The notes under the pieces are model-generated. The model saw only the letters and a program-made list of their open reading frames with translations. It was not told the DNA's origin and searched no databases. DNA of 64,000 nt from Trichosphaerium sp. ATCC 40318. Lineage: Eukaryota; Protista; Tubulinea. The position numbers and the translations under genes are program-made. Of the stretch, positions 1 to 64,000 are shown one piece after another (position 1 is the stretch's first letter; each line of letters begins with the position of its first letter). Location of the stretch: assembly GCA_038496445.1 (NCBI GenBank), contig JALMLS010000626.1, positions 10,675 to 74,674 on the forward strand. The letters run 5' to 3'.

Positions 1-1119
1 AACTCTGGTACTGTAAAAAACGTCTGAATAATAGGCGCTGGATCAGCCACTAGATGAAAAACCGAGTTAGCACATGTTTTAGAGAGGGAGGTAACCCAAA
101 GGCAAAGGCAATTGGTAGAGCGTACATCCTGTTGTTTCTATCATAATGTAGTCAAATTCTGATTTCCTCTTTACCAAGTCTCCAAGAATTTTAATTAAAT
201 CACCACGAACAGTACAACAGATACAACCGTTGTTCATTACTAGAATCTAATATAGCGTGAGAAATAAACGGAAAAACTCAGAAAAAACAAAGTTTTTTTT
301 TCTCCTCCTCACCTCTTCAGCTTTATTAAACTTTCCTTTTACAAGAGCATCATCGATTCCTATTTTACCGAATTCGTTCTCAATAACTACGCAAAACGTT
401 ACTACGCACGTACACGGAAAAGAATGTGGCGTACCGGCAATTCGTTTGCCATGGTTTTCTTCTAGTACGTAGTTGAGGAGTGTCGTTTTACCACTTCCCA
501 AGAATCCTAAAGAAGAACAAAAAAGGTGAGGGACGCTAGTTTTTCTCACATTCGGTACCTGTGATTACAGTAACCGGAATGGTGGCATTTGCTACGTTAA
601 TCGCTGCTCCTTGGGTACAAAGTGCCTCACATAATTCGTAGACAATACGAGTTTGATCGTGTAGGAGCTCGATTGTGGTTTTTAACAGTTGAAGAGGATC
701 TTCGTCGACCTTCTTTGGTCCTATAACAATAGCGCGGCAGTAACTATTGACTATTAGGTTTGTCACGAAGCAAAATAAAGACATGTGTACCCTCCAGCTT
801 GAACTATAAGGTTTCTGATTGTTCTATTACAATTGTAAGCGTAGGTAGGAGTACACAACTGATTTGTACCCAACCCAGTTGTTTAATGTTTCCTTTGACG
901 CTGCACTGGATACAATGAGCGATGCTACGTGGTCTTTGATAGCTTTGTAAACTAAAAACATCAACGAGGTGTCGTATAATACTAATACGTACCTATACTA
1001 ACCTCAGATACCACTGCTGCTAATTTAGGTTTGTTTTCTTCAGCAGGTTCTTTAACGCTATTCGCCAAATTGATGAATACTGTGGATGCAGAAAGGAGTT
1101 CAAAGACAAGTGCTTGCAT
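1..1119 (-). CDS. COG0523/CobW-family P-loop GTPase (zinc metallochaperone, ZNG1/CBWD-like) with N-terminal extension; 3' end runs off the window
   Basis: Spliced: IPVTVITG|FLGSGKTTLLN..KRIA|VIENEFG..NNGCICCTVRGDL..IMIETTG|LADP. These are Walker A, CxCC and ExxG motifs. Start at 1119 or 1164 is uncertain. Confidence 0.9.
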
Positions 1120-1323
1120 GAGTTTCGAGCTGTAAGACAAATGGTGAATCTTTTTGAAAAGCATTTTTCGCCAGGGCGATCAAAAAAACCCTGGAATAGT
1201 TTTATACCGCCACAAGGTATTTTTTTTGAGATAATTCAAATTAAAATAAAGACAATACAAGGTTCGAATGCGTTTGTTTAGAATTTATTCAAAATGAAGC
1301 AGTCGCTCATTATTACAAGGTCA

Positions 1324-1952
1324 TTAACCCAACAAGTTTGGAAAACGCAACTCCAATGTGGTACCATCAGAGAATTGAGTGTTTTGGCGGACAGTAGCGT
1401 TTGGGTCGAGCTTATGTTTCTTTCCGCTACGGTGACAGTGAATAAAGCGAAATATATGCGTTTGGAGGTGAAAAAAAAAAAACCAAAGCATTTCTGTTTT
1501 AGTTTAAATAACGCGTTTTTGGGATTTTTGAAGTCACGTGCTCATAAAAAAAAGGAAAAACCACCAATCCGTACTTTTTGTCTACGCCGTAGATCTTGTC
1601 TGCTTTGGATTGAGGACCAGCTTGAGATTTCAAGTCATCAATAACGACTTGAAATTTTTCTTCTGCGCCTACGTCAACGACATATTTCGAGGTAGCGGTC
1701 CATCTAATAGGCTTAGAACAATACCAATACCTTTATTTACCTTCCAGTAGTGGAGAAACCCTACGAGAAGTGTTAGAAGCAAGTTTTTCTGTTCAAACAA
1801 AATTCTTGAGAGTAACATACCTGTACCCATCCACAAGTGATTTCTAGACGAATCTCGTCAGTACCGTCTCTTCTACACGAGTTCAGTTAGCAAATTTAGA
1901 CCAACGAGTGGTGAGAGGTATGTATGTACCTGTAACTTGCGTTAAATGCCAT
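1324..1952 (-). CDS. Small (~95 aa) hypothetical protein, possibly ubiquitin-like beta-grasp fold
   Basis: Five exons with GT-AG introns splice in frame: MAFNASYR|RDGTDEIRLEITCGWVQ|GFSTTG|RWTATSKYVVDV..KIYGVDK|NGKKHKLDPNATVRQNTQFSDGTTLELRFPNLLG*. Confidence 0.6.
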
Positions 1953-2670
1953 TGAAAGCGAATAGGTGTTGTATGTGTTGTTATGTATTTGAAGCTAAGG
2001 CTGGTGAACGACGCACATGTCGTCCAGTTATTTCGCGAGATAGCCTCATAGTACCTTTAAAACACTTACACACGCGTATTCACTGAGTTACACGCCCTTT
2101 CTGTAGTAACCGACAATACTACATGCTTTCACAGGCAGCATTCTTGCGTAGAACGTAATGACAGCGGTCAAACCCAGACCTCTTTTGGCTTTTAGGGATG
2201 GTGTATAAGCGTGTTTTTGCCGCATTCGCATTCAGCAGGTGTAGTTCTGCTGTTTACGAAGTATAATACTGCAAATTTGTCGGTTCATAGTAATATTACT
2301 CAATATCACGTGATTCCGCTATTATGATAACATGGTGACATCTACGAAGGAAGCGCTATAAAAATACGAGCAGTTTGCAGCATATTCACAAAAGGTTGTT
2401 CCTTATCTCGTTGCAGCCTACTTGCTCATCTCATCTTTAGTACTCTTTGATTTCTTAGTCTTTTTGATTATCGGAGGTTTCTCAATTCTGGAAAAGGGTA
2501 GAACAACTTAGGATTGAGAGTAGTTTCTCCAGAGAGTGTGCACTCTCTAAAAATGACGTTATACTGCTTACAACATTAAAAGGGTTGTCAAGTATTTTAC
2601 ACTACGTATGGCGTCATATTTTTAGGAGATTTACACGCTTCCTTGAATCACAAGCCAAAAAACGCCACAG

Positions 2671-3714
2671 GATGGAGAGCATCTCATCAAACTCTTTTTC
2701 AAGTGTTTATAGAATAGGATGTTCTATAGGTATTGGTGCTACGTCGCAAGTATACAAGGCAGAAGAGAAACGAAGCAAAAAAAAACTTGCGCTCAAAATA
2801 ATTTACCCACATTTCTTTCGTGATCACGAGGACCTAGTACAGGCTGAAATAGAGGTTTTAAGCAATTTTAGACACAATAATATTGTTCGACTTGTAGACG
2901 CACACTGCCACAAAGGTACACGCCTACCTGCGCTAGTATATTATTAATTACTTTCCTTTAACATAACATTGTCTTTTTTAGATGTAGTAATGCTTGTACT
3001 CGATCGCGCTTTGCTTAGTCTTGATGCATTCTCAGCGACTTATAAACTACCCACAATACGCATAAAGTCTATTATGATGCAATGTTTAGAAGGATTACGA
3101 TATATGCATGGCTTGGGTTATGTACACAATGGTAAGCGTTTCACATCTTCCGATGTTTCTGAATAACATCCGAGAAATTTCTACGTTGTTGTCATCCTTG
3201 CTAAACGTTATGTCTAGACGTTAAGATGGGTAACATTCTTATTGGCGCCAATGGAACTATAAAATTGACAGACTTTGGGAACTGTTCTTTGATTTCAGAT
3301 GCTCAAGAAGGAAAAGTAAGACGAAGAGGAACACTTGAGTATTTGGCGCCTGAAATTTTTATTCACAAAAGATGGTCTGATAAACGTGATATATGGAGCC
3401 TTGGTCTGACATGTTTTCGATTGGTTACAGGGAATCTTCCTTTTAAAATATTGGATAATGATTTACCATCTTTTGTCATGGGGTTGACGTTATTATACAA
3501 GACAAAGACATACGATTGGGATTCTTTTCAAAACCAATACAAAAACTTAAAAGATGATCTTGTTTTATTTTTACAACATTTACTTCATCCCGTACCTGAG
3601 AGGCGTGCTTCAGCGGAAGAGTGCCTCGATATGGCTTGGCTTGGGGTGTCGTTAGACAGGGTAAAGGATAGACATTGGTTTAAAAAACGAGCTGTACATA
3701 AATTGACGAAATAA
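2671..3714 (+). CDS. Ser/Thr protein kinase (non-RD; catalytic loop HNDVKMGN)
   Basis: IGIGATSQVYKA, ALKII, HN|DVKMGNILI, DFG, GTLEYLAPE, DIWSLG motifs; 2 introns. Confidence 0.92.
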
Positions 3715-3884
3715 CTAAAAGACAATCCTGTTTTTTTTCTTCCTTTTTGACTTGAAGTCAGCCATGTTAAACTGTAATCCAACTAAAATAATGCCACTGA
3801 GCTATTAGTTGATCTGGAGAGTATATAACAGCATTGGTAGCGCCTGTAAGGCATATGTATGATTTATAAACTGCAATGTGGTAA

Positions 3885-6528
3885 ATGCTGTTTAAAGTAG
3901 TTCATGGGCACCAACGTGCGTAGAGATTAGTAAATACGCGCTTTCTGTATGTAAATAAGGTAGTGTGCCCAAAGAAGCGTCAATACTCGTACAAGCCAAC
4001 TGTAGCGTTGTATTTGGTGAATCAAAGGAGTTTCTTCGATATGACACTTGGGGCGTCGTTAAAAGTATACACACTCGATGACTGGTACGGCATTTCTAAT
4101 GAGAAAATAAACCGACATGGCGCAAGACCAATCCTTGAAAAGTAAGCAAATGCAAGCGATTGAGCTTGGCTTGAAAGTAATTTTTTTCAAAAATATAGAT
4201 ATGATCATTGTCTTCCTACTTGTCTTCAAACTTTATACAACGATTATGAATGGCAATCCTGGGAGTTCTTGTACGAAAGTGTTTACACCTATTTTGTATA
4301 AGTGTTTTGTCCGTGTTGACACGCAGCAGGCACGTGCCTGACGGATTTTGGGATAAAAGAGATCACGAGATTGGTAAATTTAACTCAATGGCTAAGACGA
4401 TTGGCGTTAAGACTATGGATGATTGGTATCATGTAAAAAAAAGAGAAGTGCAGCTATTAGGTGCCAGTGGAGTGATACAAGTAAAGTACATGTCGAGAAC
4501 CATTTTTCTCATCTTGTCTTGTACTAACATTATCTTTTTTTTTCACAGTTACAAAGGATCGTATGTTCTGGCGTTGACAAGCATATTTTCAAATTTTGAT
4601 TGGGAGCCATGGAAGTTCGCGTGCGTAGTTTTTGGCACTTTTCGCCTGGTCTATAAAAATGAGACATCATTACCACATGTGTTATTGAAAGCTGAACAAC
4701 TAGTAATACTGAATTTTGCCTTAGAAATAACAATAAGTTGTGGTGGCTTCAAGCAGCTGTAGAGATGAGAATCCAACCTGTGGCAAAAGAATTACGTGTT
4801 TTTATACTAGAAGATTGGTATAAAATTAAAGATGAACAGGTTGCTATAATCGCACCTGACTTGATGCACAAGTACTATTTTTTTTTTAAGTGTCTTTTTT
4901 ATTTTTTTTACGTTTATCCAATAGACACAATACGTTACAGGGTTTAGTATCAAATACATTCAAACACTATGATTTTAAGGAATGGGGAGCGAGGTAATTC
5001 ATTGGTATTTAAACACCCAAGCTTTTTTTTGGATTGAAATGTAAATCGAATTTTTTTTTTGCTTTTTGTTGGTCAGTACTTCTTCTTTCTTCTTGGACAT
5101 CTGACCATGGTTTTCAAACGCGAATGAGGGTAAAAATTAATCTATTTGCTATTTAACTTTGGTTCAGGCAAGTACCTCATAGTTACTGGCATTCACTTTC
5201 AAATAAGCGCGAGCATGTTGAAAGGATTGGTGAAAAATTGTATCTAACAACTCTTGATGATTGGGTTGGTATACCAATAAAATTATTGATGTCTCATGGA
5301 GCATCAGCATCTATATCGAGCATGCTCAGATCCATATATCCTGAATTTGAGTGGGATGATATGTACGGAGAGGAACCTTTAAATTTTCAAAAAAGTGGAA
5401 CATTTTATTCTTGGTTTTTTGACCTAACTTGCAAACAGCGAGCCAAGGTTCAAACATCAATCTGGATTTTGGCGGAATACATCAAATCAATTAAAGTATT
5501 TGACAGAATTAAAAGACAAACTGCAATTGACAAATCCAGCTAGATGGTAAGTACTGCTTTTTTGAACAAATCAAGATTTATTTCTGCCTGAGTTGCCGTA
5601 TTTGTGTTTTATTGACAACAGTAAATAGGTACACACTATCCAAGGAACAAATAGCTGGTGGGGGAGGCTCAGGGATCCTTAAATTTTTCCCTAGATTCGT
5701 CACGTTACTTCATCCAAACTACAACTGGAATTGGCCTGCCTTTTCAACTAAATTCAAAACAGCTAGCCAAAAGCACGTTAACACTCATTTTCACTATATC
5801 CTTATGGGAGCACGTGATATAACTTACTCATCTTAGTTGGCTTTTACAATGTACTCAGTGGCTATTTGAAGGTTATGAGGTACATCAAGAGCACTGCGTA
5901 GGCTCCAGAAGGTCTTCTGGTGTTCAAGTGACTGTTGATGTATTTGTGTCTGCTTTTAATGTTGGCTTAGAATACCAAGGTAATTTCTTGCTTACCTTTA
6001 AAACCACCTTGGCTCATGTCAACTTTTAGGAGAACATCATTACGAAGACTTACATTGTAAAGGATCTGTTACGGCTTACGAAGCCAGAGACTTTGAGAAA
6101 CTTGAACTTTGTAAAAAATCAGGTAGCTCCAAAGAAATAAGACTGGCTTCACTATTCTGACGCTCATTGTTACAACTGTAGGAATAACTATTGTACCTGT
6201 ACCATACTGGTATGTTTTAATCGAAAAGATTTCAGTCACGTGACTTTTTTTAGGTGGAAAGGTGATATGGAATCTCTGGCTGCAACAATTGTATTTTATA
6301 AACCTAGTGTTCCACTTAAATATCCTAAAGGTGTTAAACCTCTTGTAGATTTACCACAAGAGTTATTTCGCCCTTCAAAGAGTAAGAACACTCAAAAGCA
6401 TGTTTGTACTCAGCTAATGTTTTTTTTTTTAAGCTATGATGGCACCTTCTATAGAAGGATCTAGAGTGGTACACATAAACACAGAACAGCAATGGCGACC
6501 ACTATCATTCACACGAAAACCAGTATGA
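3885..6528 (+). CDS. Trp-rich repeat protein (5 x ~65-70 aa LDDWY repeats) with C-terminal PD-(D/E)xK / DUF559-like nuclease domain, copy A
   Basis: Repeat cores LDDWY, MDDWY, LEDWY, LDDWV, ARWY, each followed by W..W.F. C-terminus VDVFVSAFNVGLEYQG|EHHY..RDFEKLELCKKS|GITIVPVPYW|WKG. Confidence 0.82.
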
Positions 6529-55299: not shown

Positions 55300-58105
55300 A
55301 ATTGGGCGGGGCGCTTGCGGGAGATAGTCAATGCAAATTCGTCGGCGACAGAAAAGGCGAAACAGCGATACCAAAGGGAACAACGGAGGTAAAAAGCAAC
55401 TACAGAGACTGAAATAAGAGAAAATAAAGCGATTTTGATGAGCTCGAAAGTTTTGTTTTTTTTTTTGATCAAAAATATCCACAAAAAAAGAAACCGTACA
55501 GACGCTACAAACTGAGAAAGGGCGCACCAAAGGGGTTAAAAAACCCAACCGCGAGTGGTTTATGACAAAAAAAGGGTGGTACAAAGCGCGCGGGCGGGTA
55601 GAACGCGGCAAACAAACCTTCGAAAAGTTTTTTTTTTACCCACTGTGGATATTTGTACCGGCTTTGAAGTGAGTAATAACGGTGTTGAACCAAGCCAGGA
55701 CCACGAAAACTCGATATTTTCGGGAAAGGGAGCCAGTCTTTCAACCGTGTAGCCTAATGGAGGCGTAAATGGAGAAAAGACTATGAGGCATAAACCAAAA
55801 TCAGATTCCCCCAAAAACGCTAGGCGATTTACCTGCGCGGAAGGACAAGGAAAAATTTTGAGTGAAATGCGCCTGCAGAAATCGCATCTCTTTCCCTTGG
55901 CATAATCGAGAAAACAAAAAAGAATCGGTCGAACGCATAAAAAAGTGCATTTGAAGAAAATGCAGCAAAACGCGACGTCCGAAAGCCCTTTTGTTGTACC
56001 CGATGAACGAGCCCACAGGGAGTGCACGGTGACCATGGGTTCCGCCCATCGTGCAGCACATTTACGGTGACTGACTATCACGCCTGAGCAACACTCCCAA
56101 AATACAGGAGTGCGCTCAAGTGTGACGGTTAAGCACGAGGACCTAGGATGCTGTCGTCTTCTACCATATAAGCCCCCTATGAAACATGCGTACAAACATA
56201 GCAACATAGCAACATAGGCATTGGTAATCGACTTGTGGCTCCAACACAACCTTTCGTCTGAGGTGATGACAATGTGTGTTCTGTAACTACAGAACACTGT
56301 TTATCAAGGCATAACGAAAAGGGTAGTCTGTATTCTTCTATCGCAAGAAAAGACACTTTTGGACCAAACACGTGGTTCTATTGAGTTTTTGAGCGTTTTT
56401 GAGCACATGACTGTAAGTCCTCTTTGCTATGCGATCCCTCTTACTTCCTACTGGAAAGTAGACATGAGCATTTTAGTTGCGCTTACGCACACACACACAA
56501 AAACCACGAGTATGGCTACTCTAGCTTTCTTATGTGATAGAAAAGGCCGAGTTAAGCTCGTCTCTTAGTATATCCATCGATGACGATGCCAGTTGGTTGT
56601 TGTTGTGTGTGGTAATTGCAGCTTTAATACTTGTCCACTCCCAGAATGAAGAGTTCTCTTCTATCATTATAACGCACGTTTTAGTACGGAGCGTAGAAAT
56701 GTTAATCGAGTTCTTGGGTTACGAGACTGTACTCTCAAAGATACAGCAACACAACCACTTCAATAGTGTGTGATGTTAGTGACACAAAATACTCTCAAGT
56801 ACTTTGTATCATTAGAACGCAGACATTGTTACAATACAATATTGTCCTGAGTGGATCAATGTTTATTGTACAACGTGGACACCTGTACTCCTCCTTCATC
56901 TTATCTCTGTCATATGAAACGACAGATTGATAAAGAGATGTCGATCGAGTCATTGTCAATTAGACATGTTGAAAATTGAGCTTGTAGCCCTGAGTGGGCA
57001 AACAGTTCAATACAACATGAGTTGAAGCCCTGAGTGGGCAACAACTACTTGTGTACAAAACCACATGTTCTCTTCTAGCATTAGAACACTCGTTTGGAGT
57101 GTAGAAATGCTAATCGAGTCATGGTCAGCCGAAACTTGGCTCCCTCTTCTAGCATTAGAACACTTTATCACAATGTGTAGAAATGCTAATCGAGTAGCAA
57201 GATTTGGCAAATTCACGGTTCCTAGTATGTGCAAGTCACATCACCAAGAGCACGTGAATAAAAGTTGAAGCCCTTAGTGGGCAACAACTACCAATATAAA
57301 CACATGTTCTCTTCTAACATTATAACACCTCCAAAAAAGGTGTAGAAATGCTAATCGAGTCCAGAGTTATACAGCTCTAAGTATGTGCAAAGTCACATGC
57401 TTAGGTTGAGAGAAAGGAATCAAAGTGTTCCAGATATTTCAACAGAAGCTGTAACAACATATCCAAAACACCCAATGGAAAGATAAAGTATCAAGTACTT
57501 GGGTAATAATAGATGTGAGCCTGAAGCAGAAATGTGAAAGGCAAACTTGACGGAAAGGCACACAAGCCAAGTACATCAATAAAAGCAAGTGTAGCAAATT
57601 GCTACAACTTGAAGGCTTAACAAGGAAAGGCACAGTTCAAGTACTTGAATAAGTAAAGAAAAACCAAAAAAAAAAAAAAAAAAAAAAAAAAAGAGTGTAT
57701 GAAAAATGATGCAGTTGCAAGCTATTACCGACGATGCCTCAAGGGCTACTCAGTAAAAAAAATAGGCATGACTCATCAAGAAAAGTAGTCCTTTAAAAAG
57801 ACACAACCCTATGCTGTTGTGGCAATGTGCTCTATGAGCATCTCTTGCCATAAAAACCATAACCAAGACACATCAGCTTCTTCTCCAACAAGAAAGGCTG
57901 GTGTTGTCCGGCACCAGGTATTTGTGATGTTCATCAAAAAGACCTTCGTCTATATATCCTCCTTGAAAGAGAATAGGAATAAAGATTGAATGGTTTCTTA
58001 TGAAGTTCATTCTTCAAAAAACCACCTAAAAACCTCAACCACCTTTGGTCTGATGAGAATTTATTTTAAATGCAGCTATCTGCTTTAAAACTCTGATGCA
58101 AAAGG
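55300..58105 (+). other. rDNA upstream spacer / 5' ETS with repeated hairpins and a long poly-A run (~57667-57692)
   Basis: Non-coding, lies immediately before the SSU 5' end, and contains duplicated inverted-repeat modules. Confidence 0.7.
56653..57400 (+). repeat. Repeated hairpin modules in the rDNA spacer
   Basis: CTCTTCTAGCATTAGAACAC-N-GTGTAGAAATGCTAATCGAG at ~56655, 57069, 57144, 57308. GCCC-TGAGT/TTAGT-GGGC at 56987, 57027, 57270. Confidence 0.85.
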
Positions 58106-60755
58106 TACCTGGTTGAGCCTGCCAGGAGTGATAAGCTTTCTCGAAGGATTAAGCCATGCAAGCTCAGCAAAGAGGTATCCTCGGAGCCGCAAACGGCTCC
58201 TTAAAACGGTCGTAACCCACCCGACAAGACTAATAATGGTCACGTCATTTTGCACACAGGAACTTGTTTCCTAAACGCACTATAACCAAAACTCGTGGCC
58301 TCCCCCGCGGATAACCGGGATTAAAGGAAACCTGCGGCTAATACGTAATGCGCCTAGCGCTGCCGATGGGCCCCTCTGCTGCAAGGACCCATCGGTCGCA
58401 TCCAACGCTCAGGAGCGGACGATCACCCGATCCCATCTTGGTTCGCCAAGGGAAGCAGCCTCCCCTTAGGAAGCGGCGTCCGTACTCCGTCGGGAAGAGC
58501 GGCGTTGGGGCATGCGATGGAGTTATGAGGAGTTCTCTCTGACTAGACATGTTTCTAAAAAAAAAAGTTGAAGTTTACATAAGTGAAACTAGGTGAAAGA
58601 AAAATGAACATTGTTCAAATCTCGATCCTTCGCTGAATGTGCTTCTTCATAAAGATCATATCGATATAAAGTTGAGAGTTCTCCCCCTCCACGAGTCGGA
58701 AGGGCGGCCGACCTATCAGCCAGGCGGTAGGGTAACGGCCTACCGCGGCAGTGACGGGTAACGGGGAACTAGGGTTCGGTTCCCGGAGAAGGGGCATTAG
58801 ATACGGCCCCTGTACTTACGGGTAACAGCAGGCGCGTAACTTGGCCATTGATTGCAAATCGAGCCAGCGACTGAGTGTAACGAGGCCGGCATTTAAACCG
58901 GTCGTCGCAATGAGGGGCAACTGAATGTCGCCCTGAGAAACTATTGGAGGACAAGTTGGGTGCCAGCACCCGCGGTAACACCCACTCCGAAAGCTTATAC
59001 TTTTGCTGTTGCTGTTAAAGCGCTCGCAGTCCAAACAACGACACAGCTGAGAGGGACAAGGTTTAGATATAAGAATTTATTCTTTTGAACAAACCCCCCG
59101 ACTCTTTTTCATCGCCCGACCAGGCATAAATGGCTTCGCTCAAACGCAAGGTCAGTTTAGGCTTCGGCCGCTATGCCACCCACCAGCATCCTGGAATTGG
59201 GCTTTAAAAAAACAAAAAACAACACTTTACCAAGTGCGACGCTCAAGTCTCATTTTAACTAAGTATGAACAATATCCTGATATGCAAGTCTGAGTGAAAA
59301 CTCATGTTCTTCATTAAGGGAATAAAAACATTGTGAATTACAAAAAGTACTTTGAGGAAAAACTTGAGTTAGTCTTCACACTAATAAAGAACACACGATT
59401 ACTAGGTGCGTACGGGGTAGAGAGTGTGGTATCAGCGAGGAGTGAAATCTTTTGACCTGATCCAAACTACCCGAAGCGAAGGCGCTCTGCAAGGGCGTGG
59501 CCGGTGATCTAGAACGATGGTGGAGGGAGCGAAGCGGATTAGAGACCCGTGTAGTCTCCACAGTAAACGATGCCGACTGAATGGGCGCCGGGCAAACCAA
59601 GGCTCGGGGCCCGTTCCCACGGGAAACCGAAGTAATCGGGCCCAGGGGGGAAGTATGGTCGCAAGGCTGAAACTTAAAGGCATTGACGGAGCAACACCAC
59701 CAGGCTCTGGAGGCTGCGGCTCAATTTGACTCAACGCGCGACAACTTACCGGGATCGGACGCTCTAAGGGGACGAACAGACTGAAGGGTCTTTTCCGAGT
59801 TAGCTAACGGTGGTGCATGGTCGTTTTAGGCTCGTGGACTTATCTGTCAGGTTTATTCCGATAACGGGCGAGATCGCTACTGTCACATTGATTCCCCCGC
59901 CTCGTGCGGGACCCCTGTGCAGGACTGACGGCGAAAAGTCGTAAGAAGCGGCGGCTATAACAGATCCGGGATGCCCCCAGATATTCCGGGCCGCACGCGG
60001 CCTACACTGCTTAGTTCAACGGGTTCCTGGGCCGAACAGGCATCCGGGCAAGCCCTGAAACCGCCAGAACACTTCTTCACGACAGCGAGTTAAACCTCAG
60101 ATTTTATTATCTAAATACGACTACACTTAAACGCACCTTCGGAAACTACCACCTTCATAACAAAAGTCTGTCCTGAACCTAATATAAAGAGTTAACCCCC
60201 TCGTCGAGGCTTTTTAGGAAGTTAAATTCCTTTAATGTTAAGATGAGAAGCGCTGTTAGATGAAAACTTACATCTTTGGACTTGTTCCTTAGTGTAAACA
60301 TTGAAAGAGCTGTGGATCGTTTCAAATTAACAAACAAGGTTTCTTCTTCACTTAAATGCTTTGACTTGGAAGATTATATCTTTACCAAGGCAAACTTTAT
60401 TATGAAGCAAGTTTCTGCAATGTTCATAAAAAATACATGAAAGCGCACCGTGTGGTCGATTTGGATGTTAAGTGTGCTCAATGCTGCTTCTTCGAAAAGA
60501 CACATGCGTGCTTAGGGACTGGTTGCTGTAACTGTAGCCACGAACGCGGAATGCCTCGTACAGGTGTGTCATCAACGCACCTGGAATCTGTCCCTGTTGC
60601 TTGTACACACCGCCCGTCGCATCGACCGATGTGGGTGCGAGTGAGACCAGGGGGGACGACCGGCTTGCCGGTTATCGAACCTGCTCGAACTTGCGCTCAT
60701 AAAGGATGATGAAGTCGTAACAAGGTTTCAGTAGGTGAACCTGCTGAAGGATCAA
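58106..60755 (+). rRNA. Small-subunit (18S) rRNA, highly divergent, ~2.65 kb with large inserts
   Basis: tacctggttgagcctgccag, gattaagccatgc, gtgccagcacccgcggtaa, gaaacttaaaggcattgacgg, tgtacacaccgcccgtc, aagtcgtaacaagg..gaaggatca. Confidence 0.97.
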
Positions 60756-60995
60756 TACTATTGGTATTAAACCCTTAGAAGCAATTAAACCAACTTTTAA
60801 CCAAGTTTAAAAGAAAAAATTGGAGTATCAGCTCTGGTTTGGTAAATCTAATCTTACCTCGGTAAGTGAAGATGCAATCATCCTCTGCTGTGGTGATATC
60901 TTGCATATCTGCCAGCTCCACAACCGCCATTTTGGCAAACCAAAACACAGTCGTGGCACGACTATAAAGAACGTCAAGATTTTCGAAAGAAACCA

Positions 60996-61160
60996 AACCT
61001 TGTCGGTGAACGGTTAGGCACCTCCCCCGAAGAAGGCCATGGATCACTATGAAACCAGCCACCGGAATCGCTCTCATCTGAAGGTGGCATTGCCGAATGC
61101 CTCAGGCCGCGTTCTGTATTCTCACGAATCACAGGCAAAGGAGCGTGACTCAGCGACGCC
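60996..61160 (+). rRNA. 5.8S rRNA, highly divergent
   Basis: GC-rich island between AT-rich ITS1 and ITS2. Its 3' end gactcagcgacg can pair with the LSU 5' end cgtcctgagtt. Confidence 0.75.
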
Positions 61161-61364
61161 AGCAAAACAAACACTAAATTTATTTGGTGCTGCGTATGGT
61201 GTACACACTTAATCTTCTAAAAAAAGAAAGTGGTTGCCACAACTAATTAATAAATTGCCGGAAGTGATGTTCCTCCAGAACTCATGCCTAGCTTACTTAA
61301 GCGAAGCTTTAGAGCGAAGGTTGGTTTACATACTGAACTGAAAGCATTAAAAAAAACACAACTT

Positions 61365-64000
61365 GCGTCCTGAGTTACACTTGGCGACCTGCCTAAGTTA
61401 AGCATATCATTGGGGCAGAGGAAAGGAAACCAAAAGGGACTCCCTGAGTAGCGGCGAGCGAAAGGGGACAAGCTCAAGCCTGAATCCGAGCCTAGCATCG
61501 GAGTTGTGGGCTAAGGCGTGGTGGCTCTTCCAGACGTTGACGGGAATTACGCACGAGTCGTAGCCGTAGAGGGTGCGAGCCCCGTACGCTGTCAACCGAG
61601 GAAATAGAGTCCCATCGTCCAGGAGTAGTATGGTTTGGCCGTGCCATACGAAGTTACCGGGAGGTTACCCGGCAAGGCTAAGTATCGGGAGGTGGCCGAT
61701 AGCGCACCAGTACCGTGAGGGAAGACTGAAACAGCACTCCTCGATAGAGGGTTAAAAGACCCGAAGCCGGCAAGGGTACAAATGGCACGGAGTACGTAGG
61801 TGCCCTGCACCTAATCTGCACATGGCAGACGCTCTTGTAGCGAGGGAAAAGCGACCGGGGCCTTGTGCCCTGGAAGATTATAATGAAACAAAACGTCGAG
61901 GGGAAGGTAACATAGAAGTGACTAACACAAAAAAGTCATACTGGCTAACTGTGCTGTCCACACCATCCTACAAGCTGAAAAGCATAAAAACGTGGGTTTG
62001 GTTGAAAGGACATCAAAAAGCACTTTTAAACCTTTAAATGGCGTTGGTTCACTGAAATTACTGAAACCTCCGAATGTACGTCTTCTTCCGAAAGGAACGA
62101 AGTTCGTCATTCATCGTCCACAACCTCAATGAGGCTCTATGCCCTTATTGGGCCATGGCCTCCGTGTATCCCGTCTTGAAACACGGATCAAGGAGTTCGC
62201 CGAGCGTGCGAGGGTGAGAGATCAAACCTCCAACCCGCACAGAAATGAAGCCAAGGATAAGCTCCTAGGCCGTCAAGTTCTTTATATAAAAACAAACGTA
62301 TTACAGTCACATGTATAAGTTTGCAAAGATCGACATAAAAAACCGACTATGCTATTATCATGTTTTTGTTACGCAAGTAATTAAAAACACGTCACACCAA
62401 AGTAGATACACTTTGCCATCTCCGGCGTTGTTCTCTTGGCAGGCGATAGTACGTTGGGCGATACCCGAAAGGTAGCGATCTATACCCGAAAAGGGGGAAG
62501 GCGGGAGAAATCCCGCTGGACGCCCGTAGCGTTGCTGACGTGCAAATCGCTCGCCGGACATTGGGTATAGGGGCGAGAGACCAAACGAGCTGCCAACGTA
62601 GCTGGTACCGTTCGAAGTATCCCTAAGGATAGAGGGGGTCCGTGACGCCGGTCTCGTCTCGTAGAGCCACTGGAAAGAGGTATCGGAGGCCAAAGTTGCC
62701 ATCGACCTATTATCAAACACATAAGAGGCGACCGACTACAGGCCGAATGGCTGTAGTCACCGAGACGGTGGACCCCTATTGGGCCGGTCTTGATAAGCAG
62801 GACTGACGAGACGGTTTTAAACGCGAGCAGCAGCAAAGGCGCCCGAATAGGCAGTAACCAAGACAACGAAGGCGGTGTTCCAGTTTAGACAGCTGGAAGG
62901 TGGACATGGAAGTCGTCATCCTCTAAGGAGTGAGTAACTTCTCACCAGCCGAATTGGGACGCGCCGAAAATGGATGGCGCTAAACTGCCTTAGCCGCCGC
63001 TGCGCGATCGCCCCGGCTCGGCCCAGGGTGCGGTAGGACGGCGTGCTGGTGGCGTAGAAGGGGGGCGGTGGCGTCCACCCGGAGCCACCAGCAGTGATGA
63101 TCTTGGTGGTAGTAGCAATTGGAGCCTGGTGAAACAGTGTTTATCACAGCCAGGTCGCCCAAGTGGGGAAGGGTTTCGCGGTGATGGCATTCAGCTGCGA
63201 GTTAGCCGGTCCTAAGCCAGCTCCTAATAGAGTATACTGTTTGATGCTGGCAGACGACACCTTGTTCGGATGAACTTTACTGTTTTCTGAAGACTGGTGG
63301 AAGTCTGCGATGCTTTCAACTCGGCGAAAGGCAACCTGGTGAGTAATCCAGGGCATGGGTAAGGAGGATGCATTTGCTTTAGAAGTGGCAACACTGAGAG
63401 AGAGAGCGCACGCGAGCAACCACACTTCTGCGGGGCCTTCTCCCGCGCCTAAGCTATTCGAGGGAAACTCCCCGGAGCCACGTAAAGCGGCGAAGGGAAA
63501 GAGTCGAGGGTAGCTAATGGGAAAGCACTTTTGCTTTCTAGGGGTGTTGGTGAGCTCGTTCTCACGAGGCTGCTCCTCTCCGAAGCCGACACTTTCGGGT
63601 GTTCAGTGTCCTCCAGGCTCATACCGTACCGAAAACCGCATCAGGTCCCCTAGGTTAGTCACCTCTGGCGCTGCACGGTGTAAACGGCGTAAGGGAAGTC
63701 GGCATACGCGGCCCGTAACTTCGGGAAAAGGGCTGGCTCTGCTGACCGGGACCCGGGACGACGTGCGTCTGCGCTACTTCAGTGTAGCCCCTTCGGGAAC
63801 GGCGCACAGTCCCTGCAAAGAGGTCCACAAGCGGATCATGGCGGAACTCTCAGAAGCTTAGAGAACCCAACTGTTTACTTAAAACTTAGCCCTTTGATAC
63901 CTCCTCTGAGGTCTGACAAAGGGTGACTCCTGCCCAGTGCTTTGAAAGTTGCGGTGCTTAATTTCACCCAAGCACGGGTTAACGGCGGGAGTAACTATGA
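61365..64000 (+). rRNA. Large-subunit (28S) rRNA, 5' part, truncated by window end
   Basis: ttaagcatatc, agtagcggcgagcgaa, gtaccgtgagggaa, ccgtcttgaaacacgga, cgtaacttcgggaaaagg, aacggcgggagtaactatga. Confidence 0.97.

What the first reader, a model, noticed from the sequence alone, without database searches (positions are those of the whole stretch)
58106..64000. GC-rich rRNA cores interrupted by AT-rich inserts: possible fragmented cytosolic rRNA
Seen: abrupt AT-rich blocks at about 58230-58300, 58550-58680, 59035-59110, 59205-59400 and 60065-60505 (SSU) and 61880-62140, 62275-62410 and 63225-63300 (LSU). They resemble the ITS in composition and several are closed by stems (ctctctgact/agttgagag; ctcaagt/acttgag). 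The ~440 nt insert near h41/h42 is unusually large for that site. Known: Euglena and trypanosomes excise extra spacers from LSU rRNA, and the D7a hidden break is AU-rich. Inference: either excised spacers giving a multi-piece SSU and LSU, or very large retained expansion segments.
Basis: partly seen in the sequence, partly recalled or inferred. Interest (0 to 1): 0.7.

Follow-up and report, generated by a model that had tools for sequence, protein, structure and literature searches.

The report
Ribosomal RNA genes with spacer-like inserts
This amoeba-like protist's nuclear ribosomal RNA genes carry eight AT-rich inserts that are as rare in RNA-derived assemblies as the ordinary discarded spacers, so its small and large ribosomal RNAs are probably made as several separate pieces; a small-subunit RNA in pieces has not been described for a cytosolic ribosome.

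Summary
Window 58106-64000 is a nuclear rDNA unit: SSU 58106-60757 (2652 nt), a weak 5.8S, and an LSU cut by the window end. GC-rich cores (57% GC) are interrupted by AT-rich blocks (36% GC, the same as ETS/ITS and the flanking genome). All blocks sit at known variable sites (V2 twice, V4, V8/h41, D2, D3, D6). No intron family matches them.

New here are Logan contigs of four public runs. In them the blocks have about the same word depth as ETS/ITS, which is 100 to 1000 times below the cores. Deep contigs of one run start and stop at block borders. No deep contig joins the cores across a block. Depth also steps between neighbouring cores.

I read the blocks as extra transcribed spacers that are cut out and not re-joined (about 0.6). 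That gives an SSU of about five pieces and a multi-piece LSU. Retained expansion segments remain a real rival (about 0.3), because only contig depths were available, not raw reads.

The scan has noted the same feature on other rDNA copies of this genome: s1-400896 and s1-390542 read it as pieces, s1-372616 as expansion segments. The organism fits Trichosphaerium sp. (unproven). A gel, a northern blot or long-read RNA would settle it.

The parts
57666..58105 (+). 5' external transcribed spacer (at least this much); begins at an A-tract at 57655-57690
   Evidence: X1 contig 1 runs from about 57666 into the SSU without a difference; X5 contig 17 crosses the ETS/SSU border. GC 36%.
58106..60757 (+). 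SSU rRNA gene, 2652 nt including the blocks; 1636 nt without S1-S4
   Evidence: Rfam RF01960, model 1-1831, 1033 bits; sum of cores.
58229..58300 (+). S1, AT-richer block in V2 (h8-h9 area)
   Evidence: GC 42%. X2 depth 2242-4115 against 7e4-4e5 beside it; X5 contig 18 crosses it at depth 459.
58546..58682 (+). S2, AT-rich block in V2 (h10/h11 area)
   Evidence: GC 31%. Lies in the Rfam insert region. X5 contig 19 at depth 109; one X2 contig of depth 500 joins 58523 to 58683.
59035..59400 (+). S3, the whole V4/ES6 region: two AT-rich parts around a 95-nt GC-rich island (59110-59204)
   Evidence: GC 39%/57%/31%. X2 contig 59091-59244 at depth 3673 and 59304-59440 at depth 705 against 2e5-9e5 in the flanks; X5 contig 20 at depth 175.
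60065..60505 (+). S4, 441-nt AT-rich block at V8 (h41), just 5' of h42
   Evidence: Rfam: 456 nt where the model has 23. GC 37%; MFE z -3.5. Depth: X1 5.6-8.2 with a gap at 60105-60244, X2 346-728, X5 41.5.
60758..60994 (+). ITS1
   Evidence: Lies between the SSU 3' end and the 5.8S. GC 39%. X1 has no contig on 60769-60941.
60995..61158 (+). 5.8S rRNA, very divergent
   Evidence: RF00002 27.8 bits, below the gathering score of 42. Its 3' end pairs with the LSU 5' end, duplex -28.1 kcal/mol, z -5.0.
61159..61364 (+). ITS2
   Evidence: GC 36%. X2 depth 5517-6254 at 61219 and 61349.
61365..64000 (+). LSU rRNA gene, 5' two thirds (cut by the window end)
   Evidence: Rfam RF02543, model 1-2268, 980 bits.
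61880..62140 (+). L1, AT-richer part of D2/ES7; its 3' limit is uncertain and may be near 62065
   Evidence: Rfam alignment. GC 41%. X2 depth 5390 at 62024 but 31413 at 62103; X5 contig 24 (62065-62207) at depth 577.
62275..62434 (+). L2, AT-rich block in the loop of a D3 hairpin
   Evidence: 155 nt where the model has 15. GC 30-33%. X2 depth 3072-16096, X5 bin 372. The X9 deep contig starts at 62435. Similarity to relative L019 ends at 62434.
63225..63330 (+). L3, block in the hairpin loop after GGUCCUAAG (D6/ES15 site)
   Evidence: Rfam alignment. GC 44%; MFE z -4.1. The X9 deep contigs end at 63239 and restart at 63378. Adapter-tagged ends at 63219 and 63337 (X5) and 63329 (X2).

Best explanation
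The AT-rich blocks are extra internal transcribed spacers. RNA polymerase I transcribes them as part of the pre-rRNA. They are then cut out during processing, like ITS1 and ITS2, and the ends are not re-joined.

The mature SSU rRNA would then be about five separate RNAs, roughly 123, 245, 352, 664 and 252 nt (1636 nt in all). The 5' two thirds of the LSU would be at least four RNAs plus the 5.8S. The pieces would be held together by the helices at whose tips the blocks sit and by ribosomal proteins.

Shown here: the gene map, the composition contrast, the positions at variable sites, and the low abundance of the blocks in RNA-derived contigs.

Inferred: that this low abundance reflects excision, the exact ends of the pieces, the lack of ligation, and the enzymes involved.
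For: 1. Composition. The blocks have 36.3% GC, the same as ETS/ITS (36.6%) and the flanking genome (37.9%). The cores have 57%.

2. Depth in Logan contigs.
- X2: blocks 346-4115 (L2 up to 16096), ETS 1203-3469, ITS2 5517-6254, cores 2e5-1.1e6.
- X5 (RNA on record): blocks 41-577, ETS 155, ITS1 13-23, large cores 6e4-5e5.
- X9: blocks 0-7, cores 24-2381.
- X1, which matches the window with 0-1 differences per contig: S4 interior 5.6-8.2 with a hole at 60105-60244, as in ITS1, against 495 and 29 on the two sides.

3. Where contigs lie. The deep X9 contigs run 59409-59647, 59651-60010, 61354-61746, 62435-63239 and 63378-63799, starting and stopping at or within about 80 nt of block borders; 59647/59651 is a break inside SSU-4 and 63799 is the laid stretch's end. 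Low-depth contigs carry the ETS and the blocks.

4. No deep contig skips a block. The only such joint is 58523 to 58683 at depth 500.

5. Depth steps between adjacent cores. X5 contig 60039-60619 has mean depth 41.5, which caps SSU-5 words at about 270 against about 1.4e5 in SSU-4. This is hard to get from one continuous RNA.

6. No intron family matches at E up to 10.

7. Precedent. The Acanthamoeba hidden break is an AU-rich segment in a GC-richer LSU (PMC9502406). Extra ITSs sit in expansion-segment sites, including ES15, which is the site of L3 (PMC9082867).

8. If the genome is Trichosphaerium sp., its 22 SSU copies differ by less than 3% (PMC10521059). Hidden copies with very different inserts are then unlikely.
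Against: - Only assembled contigs could be laid, not raw reads. The tool states that per-contig depth cannot rank parts of a gene and that a filter drops human-like contigs, so holes prove nothing.
- X1, X2 and X9 are only guessed to be RNA.
- X2 has zero depth inside S2, in the ETS at 57948-58060 and at the h44 tip (60664-60682). Its rDNA therefore differs patchily from the window.
- In X5, a contig inside mature SSU-5 (60590-60729, 10 differences) has depth 58, no higher than the S4 contig. Part of the low-depth signal may therefore be DNA or a minor rDNA copy.
- All block sites are classical expansion-segment sites, and AT-rich expansion segments are expected in an AT-rich genome.
- The GC-rich island inside S3 is odd for a spacer.
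- A multi-piece cytosolic SSU has no precedent: Euglena keeps its 18S expansions (PMC9082867). From my own memory, the long SSU of Phreatamoeba (Hinkle 1994) was reported intact; that paper was not held.
- Border pairing is not above chance for most blocks.
Confidence: 0.6

Rival explanations
1. The blocks are ordinary, if large, AT-rich expansion segments kept in continuous mature SSU and LSU rRNAs. Their AT-richness follows the mutation bias of a 38%-GC genome. The low depth would then be an artefact of contig-level depth, filters, and differences between rDNA copies or strains.
For: - All blocks sit at known variable sites: V2, V4, V8, D2, D3, D6.
- S4, L1 and L3 fold better than shuffles (z -3.5, -2.5, -4.1).
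- A relative has a GC-rich, GAAA-capped hairpin array at the L2 site, which looks like a retained segment (L019).
- Long SSU genes are known in Trichosphaerium and other Amoebozoa (PMC3145751).
- Euglena retains its 18S expansions (PMC9082867).
- RNA-library contigs do cross core/block borders (X5 contigs 18-21 and 24).
- Holes in X2 and the depth-58 contig inside SSU-5 in X5 show that depth can mislead.
Against: - In four runs from four studies the blocks have the depth of ETS/ITS, not of the cores. This includes X1, which matches the window almost exactly.
- A retained segment should be 100 to 1000 times more abundant than the ETS of the same organism.
- AT bias in libraries does not give factors of 100 to 1000.
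- Depth steps between neighbouring cores are not expected of one molecule.
Confidence: 0.3
2. The blocks are present only in a minority of silent rDNA copies, such as this chromosomal copy beside protein genes. The expressed copies would lack them or carry very different inserts.
For: - The window copy has private letters: 59731 T, where X1, X5 and X9 read C.
- At 62737 and 62755 the window has the minor type in X2, X5 and X9.
- One X2 contig joins 58523 to 58683 (all).
Against: - No deep contig lacks a block.
- Other rDNA copies of this genome carry the same kind of blocks (scan notes s1-372616, s1-400896, s1-390542, not checked by me).
- If the genome is Trichosphaerium sp., its 22 SSU copies differ by less than 3% (PMC10521059).
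- X1 and X2 contigs of the blocks match the window with 0-2 differences.
Confidence: 0.06
3. The blocks are introns (group I, spliceosomal-like or bulge-helix-bulge type) that are spliced out, with the rRNA re-ligated into continuous molecules.
For: The blocks are rare in RNA relative to the cores. rRNA introns are common in Amoebozoa (my own knowledge).
Against: - No intron family matches at E up to 10 over 58000-64000.
- No deep contig joins the two sides of any block. The single joint has depth 500 against 2e5-7e5 beside it.
- The blocks lie at helix tips of variable regions, not in the conserved cores where rRNA introns usually insert.
Confidence: 0.04

Closest known systems
Extra internal transcribed spacers of the euglenid and kinetoplastid LSU rRNA (Euglena 14 pieces; trypanosomatid LSU-alpha/beta plus srRNAs)
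   Same: Spacer-like inserts at expansion-segment sites. They are transcribed with the pre-rRNA, removed without ligation, and the pieces are held together by base pairing (PMC9082867, PMC6411936).
   Different: In those lineages only the LSU is split. The Euglena 18S expansions stay in the mature RNA (PMC9082867). Here the SSU would be split about four times. The organism is an amoeba-like protist, probably an amoebozoan, not a euglenozoan. The pieces have not been seen on a gel.
Hidden break or gap of 26S/28S rRNA (Acanthamoeba 55es1, protostome D7a/ES19, rodent D6/ES15)
   Same: An AU-rich segment in a GC-richer rRNA is excised at a variable helix. Acanthamoeba 55es1 is 63-86% AT against 41-49% for the whole LSU (PMC9502406). 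L3 here sits at the D6/ES15 site that rodents use (PMC9082867).
   Different: Those cases have one break per LSU and none in the SSU. Here there are at least three LSU sites in the part of the gene seen, plus four SSU sites.
Unusually long, continuous SSU rRNAs with large expansion segments (Phreatamoeba/Mastigamoeba balamuthi about 2.7 kb, Pelomyxa, Euglena)
   Same: SSU gene far above 1.8 kb, with the extra length confined to variable regions. Long SSU-rDNA is known for Trichosphaerium (PMC3145751, PMC11575492).
   Different: In those cases the inserts are reported as part of the mature RNA (Euglena: PMC9082867; Phreatamoeba: my own memory, paper not held). Here the RNA-derived contigs put the inserts at spacer-like abundance.
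Fragmented organellar rRNAs (apicomplexan and Chlamydomonas mitochondria)
   Same: An SSU rRNA that works as several pieces.
   Different: Those are organellar, with scrambled gene pieces transcribed separately. Here there is one collinear nuclear rDNA unit.

Membership tests
Eukaryotic nuclear rDNA unit (SSU-ITS1-5.8S-ITS2-LSU) | Full-length match to the eukaryotic SSU rRNA model | tested here: met
   RF01960, model 1-1831, 1033 bits, 58106-60757.
Eukaryotic nuclear rDNA unit (SSU-ITS1-5.8S-ITS2-LSU) | 5.8S between SSU and LSU, pairing with the LSU 5' end | tested here: met
   RF00002 reaches only 27.8 bits (below 42) at 60995-61158. Its 3' end forms a -28.1 kcal/mol duplex with the LSU 5' end, z -5.0.
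Eukaryotic nuclear rDNA unit (SSU-ITS1-5.8S-ITS2-LSU) | Eukaryotic LSU downstream on the same strand | tested here: met
   RF02543, model 1-2268, 980 bits, 61365-64000, cut by the window end.
Fragmented cytosolic rRNA with extra internal transcribed spacers | Spacer-like inserts at variable (expansion-segment) sites | tested here: met
   Rfam alignments place them in V2, V4, V8, D2, D3 and D6. Their GC equals that of ETS/ITS.
Fragmented cytosolic rRNA with extra internal transcribed spacers | Inserts absent from the mature RNA (present only at precursor level) | tested here: inconclusive
   Contig depths of the blocks match ETS/ITS and are 100 to 1000 times below the cores in X2, X5 and X9. 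S4 is also low in X1. These are contig means, three runs are only guessed to be RNA, and there are filter holes.
Fragmented cytosolic rRNA with extra internal transcribed spacers | Discrete mature 5' and 3' ends at the insert borders | tested here: inconclusive
   X9 deep contigs end at 59409, 60010, 62435, 63239 and 63378. Adapter-tagged ends lie at 63219, 63337 and 63329. Contigs cannot prove RNA ends.
Fragmented cytosolic rRNA with extra internal transcribed spacers | Pieces not ligated; several rRNA bands on a denaturing gel | not testable with these tools
   No deep joint was seen across any block. A gel or northern blot is needed.
Retained rRNA expansion segments | Located at known expansion-segment sites as helix extensions | tested here: met
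   The h41 stem around S4 is poorly matched.
Retained rRNA expansion segments | Present in mature rRNA in the same amount as the core | tested here: inconclusive
   Depths argue against it, with the caveats given above.
rRNA introns (group I, group II or other spliced elements) | Match to an intron family or its core structure | tested here: not met
   No intron family at E up to 10 over 58000-64000.
rRNA introns (group I, group II or other spliced elements) | Abundant ligated exon junctions in RNA | tested here: not met
   The only joint is 58523 to 58683 at depth 500 in X2. There is none at the other blocks.

The most novel reading that the evidence does not exclude
This protist builds its cytosolic small ribosomal subunit from about five separate SSU rRNA pieces, made by removing four spacer-like inserts at V2 (two), V4 and V8. 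Its LSU is likewise multi-piece. This would be the first multi-piece cytosolic SSU rRNA. The whole V4/ES6 region would be discarded, and the decoding-centre domain (h42-h45) would be carried on its own RNA of about 250 nt.
Probability: 0.5. Interest if true: 0.85.

Novelty: new variant of a known kind. Interest (0 to 1): 0.68.

Why it matters
rRNA made in pieces by removing extra transcribed spacers is known for the LSU of euglenids, kinetoplastids, Acanthamoeba, insects and some rodents. I found no report of it for a cytosolic SSU (search; PMC9082867 says Euglena keeps its 18S expansions).

If true, it shows three things. The 40S subunit tolerates breaks in the 5', central and 3' domains. ES6/V4 can be discarded altogether. 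New processing sites can arise repeatedly at expansion-segment sites.

There are practical consequences too. RNA from this organism would look degraded (low RIN). 18S assemblies from transcriptomes would come out as partial pieces. rRNA-depletion and barcoding assays would behave oddly. The case is easy to test, because the likely organism is in culture.

Tried and rejected
1. Introns: the Rfam E-value scan over 58000-64000 found no intron family. Open frames inside the blocks are short, 68 codons at most.

2. Closing stems as a signal: duplexes between the two borders are not above shuffled controls, except for L1 and ITS2.

3. Structure z-scores do not separate blocks from ETS/ITS.

4. Relatives:
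- A metagenome scan with the odd 530-loop 20-mer gave 18 loci, all only 67-92% alike in short core stretches, so no close relative.
- A search with a spurious ORF on LSU-3 gave one relative contig (L019).
- A second search on SSU-4 gave nothing.

5. Fetching RNA-run contigs through spurious rDNA ORFs failed: four ORF look-ups were not on record.

6. Organism guesses dropped:
- Amoeboaphelidium: the FD01 primers are absent from the window, and the paper does not describe such rRNA.
- Mastigamoeba: it has no mitochondrial genome and is GC-rich (my own knowledge).
- Rosculus/Sainouroidea: fits the GC content (PMC10770858), but other scan notes call the organism marine.
- Trichosphaerium sp. ATCC 40318 fits better: 37.69% GC, 22 dispersed SSU copies with less than 3% divergence, long SSU (PMC10521059, PMC3145751, PMC11575492). 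It remains unproven.

7. The Hinkle 1994 paper on the long Phreatamoeba SSU is not held.

The stretch was kept under 6000 letters.

Full report
WHAT IS THERE

Rfam finds a complete eukaryotic SSU rRNA at 58106-60757 (2652 nt, model 1-1831, 1033 bits). It also finds the first two thirds of a eukaryotic LSU rRNA at 61365-64000 (model 1-2268, cut by the window end). Between them lies a very divergent 5.8S at 60995-61158. It scores 27.8 bits, below the gathering score of 42. I accept it because its 3' end pairs with the LSU 5' end far better than shuffled sequence does (-28.1 kcal/mol, z -5.0). The rest of the window (1-58000) holds no other Rfam family and carries ordinary intron-containing protein genes. 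This rDNA unit is therefore chromosomal and lies beside protein genes.

THE OBSERVATION

| Segment | Coordinates | GC |
|---|---|---|
| S1 | 58229-58300 | 42% |
| S2 | 58546-58682 | 31% |
| S3 | 59035-59400 | 39% and 31%, around a 95-nt island of 57% |
| S4 | 60065-60505 | 37% |
| L1 | 61880-62140 | 41% |
| L2 | 62275-62434 | 30-33% |
| L3 | 63225-63330 | 44% |

Pooled, the blocks have 36.3% GC, ETS/ITS 36.6%, the 57-kb flank 37.9% and the cores 57.0%. Some expansions are GC-rich (58336-58545, 62985-63100, 63390-63620), so the organism has two compositional kinds of extra sequence.

Rfam alignments place every block at a classical variable site:
- S1 and S2 lie in V2.
- S3 is the V4 region.
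- S4 has 456 nt where the model has 23, in the h41/V8 hairpin just 5' of h42. The h41 stem is poorly matched.
- L1 lies in D2/ES7, and L2 has 155 nt in place of 15 in a D3 hairpin loop.
- L3 lies in the hairpin loop after GGUCCUAAG, the D6/ES15 site.

Pairing of the two borders beats shuffled flanks only for L1 (z -2.4) and for the known helix across ITS2. S4, L3 and L1 fold better than shuffles (z -3.5, -4.1, -2.5). So does the ETS (z -4.4), so structure does not discriminate between the readings. No intron family matches at E up to 10.

RNA EVIDENCE

One run search and one laying were allowed, and only Logan contigs were on offer. The tool warns that a contig has one mean depth, that depths of all laid contigs are summed, and that a filter drops human-like contigs. 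What follows is therefore indicative, not proof.

Summed word depths:

| Region | X2 (897 M letters, RNA by guess) | X5 (RNA on record) | X9 (RNA by guess) |
|---|---|---|---|
| Large cores | 2e5-1.1e6 | 6e4-5e5 | 24-2381 |
| ETS | 1203-3469 | 155 | 0.8-3.6 |
| ITS1 | no clean value | 13-23 | no clean value |
| ITS2 | 5517-6254 | about 1400 | 0 at 61219 and 61349 |
| Blocks | 346-4115 (L2 3072-16096) | 41-577 | 0-7 |

In every run the blocks sit at the level of the spacers that are known to be discarded, 100 to 1000 times below the cores.

X1 matches the window with 0-1 differences per contig, so it is the same strain. There the interior of S4 has depth 5.6-8.2 and a hole at 60105-60244, just as ITS1 has a hole at 60769-60941. 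The contigs on either side have 495 and 29.

Where contigs lie:
- In X9 the deeper contigs run 59409-59647, 59651-60010, 61354-61746, 62435-63239 and 63378-63799. They start and stop at or within about 80 nt of block borders; the 59647/59651 break lies inside SSU-4, and 63799 is the end of the stretch that was laid.
- Separate contigs of depth 3.6-6.7 carry the ETS and the blocks.
- In X5, low-depth contigs cross the borders ETS/SSU, SSU-1/S1/SSU-2, SSU-2/S2, SSU-4/S4/SSU-5 and L1/LSU-2. The blocks are therefore present in an RNA library joined to the cores, as precursors would be.

No deep contig joins two cores across a block. The only such joint (58523 to 58683, X2) has depth 500. This argues against splicing with ligation and against abundant insert-free gene copies.

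Depth also steps between neighbouring cores. The X5 contig 60039-60619 is identical to the window over 60506-60619 and has mean depth 41.5. That caps SSU-5 words at about 270, while SSU-4 just upstream is near 1.4e5. The same direction is seen in X1 (29 against 495), X2 and X9. One continuous RNA should not show such steps. Separate RNAs of different size and conservation, recovered or depleted differently, can.

A weaker point: RNA-type runs hold 0.50-0.70 of the sampled words whatever their size, which is close to the core fraction of 0.67. Runs of unknown type reach 0.73-0.84 (one holds only 0.61), and X1 holds 0.89.

WEAK POINTS OF THAT EVIDENCE

- X2 has zero depth inside S2, in the ETS at 57948-58060, at 59731 in a universal core stretch, and at the h44 tip (60664-60682). 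Both the filter and local sequence differences therefore make holes.
- In X5 a contig inside mature SSU-5 (60590-60729, 10 differences) has depth 58. Part of the low-depth signal may be DNA or a minor gene copy.
- The window copy is itself a minor type at 62737 and 62755, a compensating pair where the other letters dominate in X2, X5 and X9. At 59731, X1, X5 and X9 read C.
- A hidden abundant copy with inserts more than 10% different would mimic excision. I think this unlikely: the cores of X2 are almost identical to the window, and its block contigs differ by 0-2 letters.

THE ORGANISM

It is not given. Notes of this scan call it a marine amoeba with base-doubling mitochondrial editing.

The window fits Trichosphaerium sp. 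ATCC 40318:
- The published genome is 70.87 Mb at 37.69% GC, with 22 SSU-rDNA copies on different scaffolds differing by less than 3%, and many giant-virus genes (PMC10521059).
- The genus has long, divergent SSU genes (PMC3145751).
- A congener's gene of about 2430 bp aligns to ATCC 40318 over only 70-75% of its length (PMC11575492), which is about the core fraction here.

I could not prove the identity. If it holds, the figure of less than 3% argues against hidden divergent copies.

A contig of another assembly (GCA_041156705.1, L019) is 91.5% identical over 62434-62890. It then continues with GC-rich, GAAA-capped hairpins where the window has AT-rich L2. A relative thus has what looks like a normal retained segment at that site.

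READING

Best (about 0.6): the blocks are extra internal transcribed spacers, removed and not re-joined. This gives an SSU of about five pieces (123, 245, 352, 664 and 252 nt; 1636 nt in all) and an LSU of several pieces.

Rivals:
- Retained AT-rich expansion segments, with misleading contig depths (about 0.3).
- Blocks confined to silent gene copies (about 0.06).
- Spliced introns (about 0.04).

COMPARISON WITH WHAT IS KNOWN

Extra ITSs at expansion-segment sites split the LSU of euglenids and kinetoplastids, and hidden breaks split the LSU of insects (ES19) and rodents (ES15) (PMC9082867). In Acanthamoeba the break is an AU-rich segment (63-86% AT) in a GC-richer LSU (PMC9502406).

In Euglena the 18S expansions are not removed (PMC9082867). 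My full-text search found no constitutively split cytosolic SSU. The mechanism would therefore be of a known kind, but its application to the SSU, at four sites, would be new.

EARLIER NOTES OF THIS SCAN

The same feature was noted on other rDNA copies of this genome. s1-372616 read it as expansion segments, without reads. s1-400896 and s1-390542 read it as pieces. These are unchecked AI notes and probably lean on the same public runs, so I do not count them as independent support.

Noticed in passing
window 58958-58977: The universally conserved 530-loop reads GTGCCAGCACCCGCGGTAAC, with C where nearly all life has G, and AAC in place of AAT. Standard 515F-type primers would mismatch. The 18 metagenome contigs with the same 20-mer are only distant rRNAs, 67-92% alike in short core stretches.
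   Followed up: partly
window 57796, 60495, 61351 and 58640, 60485: The motif AAAA[AG]ACACA lies in the ETS, at the very end of S4 and at the very end of ITS2. In the last two cases TGCGT of the next mature part follows. There are 3 hits on the + strand of 6.5 kb of rDNA, none on the + strand and 3 on the - strand of the other 57.5 kb. S2 and S4 also share TGCTTCTTC[AG][AT]AAAGA near their 3' ends. This may be a shared processing signal or may be chance.
   Followed up: partly
window 62736-62755 and 59731: The window's rDNA copy is a minor type. At 62737 (T) and 62755 (A), a compensating pair in a hairpin, C and G dominate in X2, X5 and X9. At 59731, X1, X5 and X9 read C where the window has T. 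This fits several slightly different rDNA copies in one genome.
   Followed up: partly
window 60655-60690 (tip of h44): This is a GC-rich, hypervariable hairpin. X5 has a version with 7 changes in 19 nt that look compensatory. X2 has almost no depth here (6.8), although 60642 has 8e4. The cause could be a filter hole, a divergent copy or a further break; it is not resolved.
   Followed up: no
L019 459-627 (contig of assembly GCA_041156705.1): A relative is 91.5% identical over window 62434-62890. It carries GC-rich hairpins capped by GAAA where the window has the AT-rich block L2. The insert at this site has changed character between relatives.
   Followed up: partly
window 60995-61158: The 5.8S rRNA is so divergent that Rfam scores it below threshold (27.8 against 42 bits). 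Its helix with the LSU 5' end is nevertheless intact.
   Followed up: yes
window 57655-57690: A run of about 25-35 A lies about 420 nt upstream of the SSU. The X1 contig that runs into the SSU begins there. It may mark the start of the transcribed spacer, or it may only be a place where contigs break.
   Followed up: no
window 59110-59204: A 95-nt GC-rich island (57%) sits inside the V4 block. It shares the low depth of its AT-rich flanks: the X2 contig 59091-59244 has depth 3673. The whole V4/ES6 region seems to behave as one unit.
   Followed up: partly
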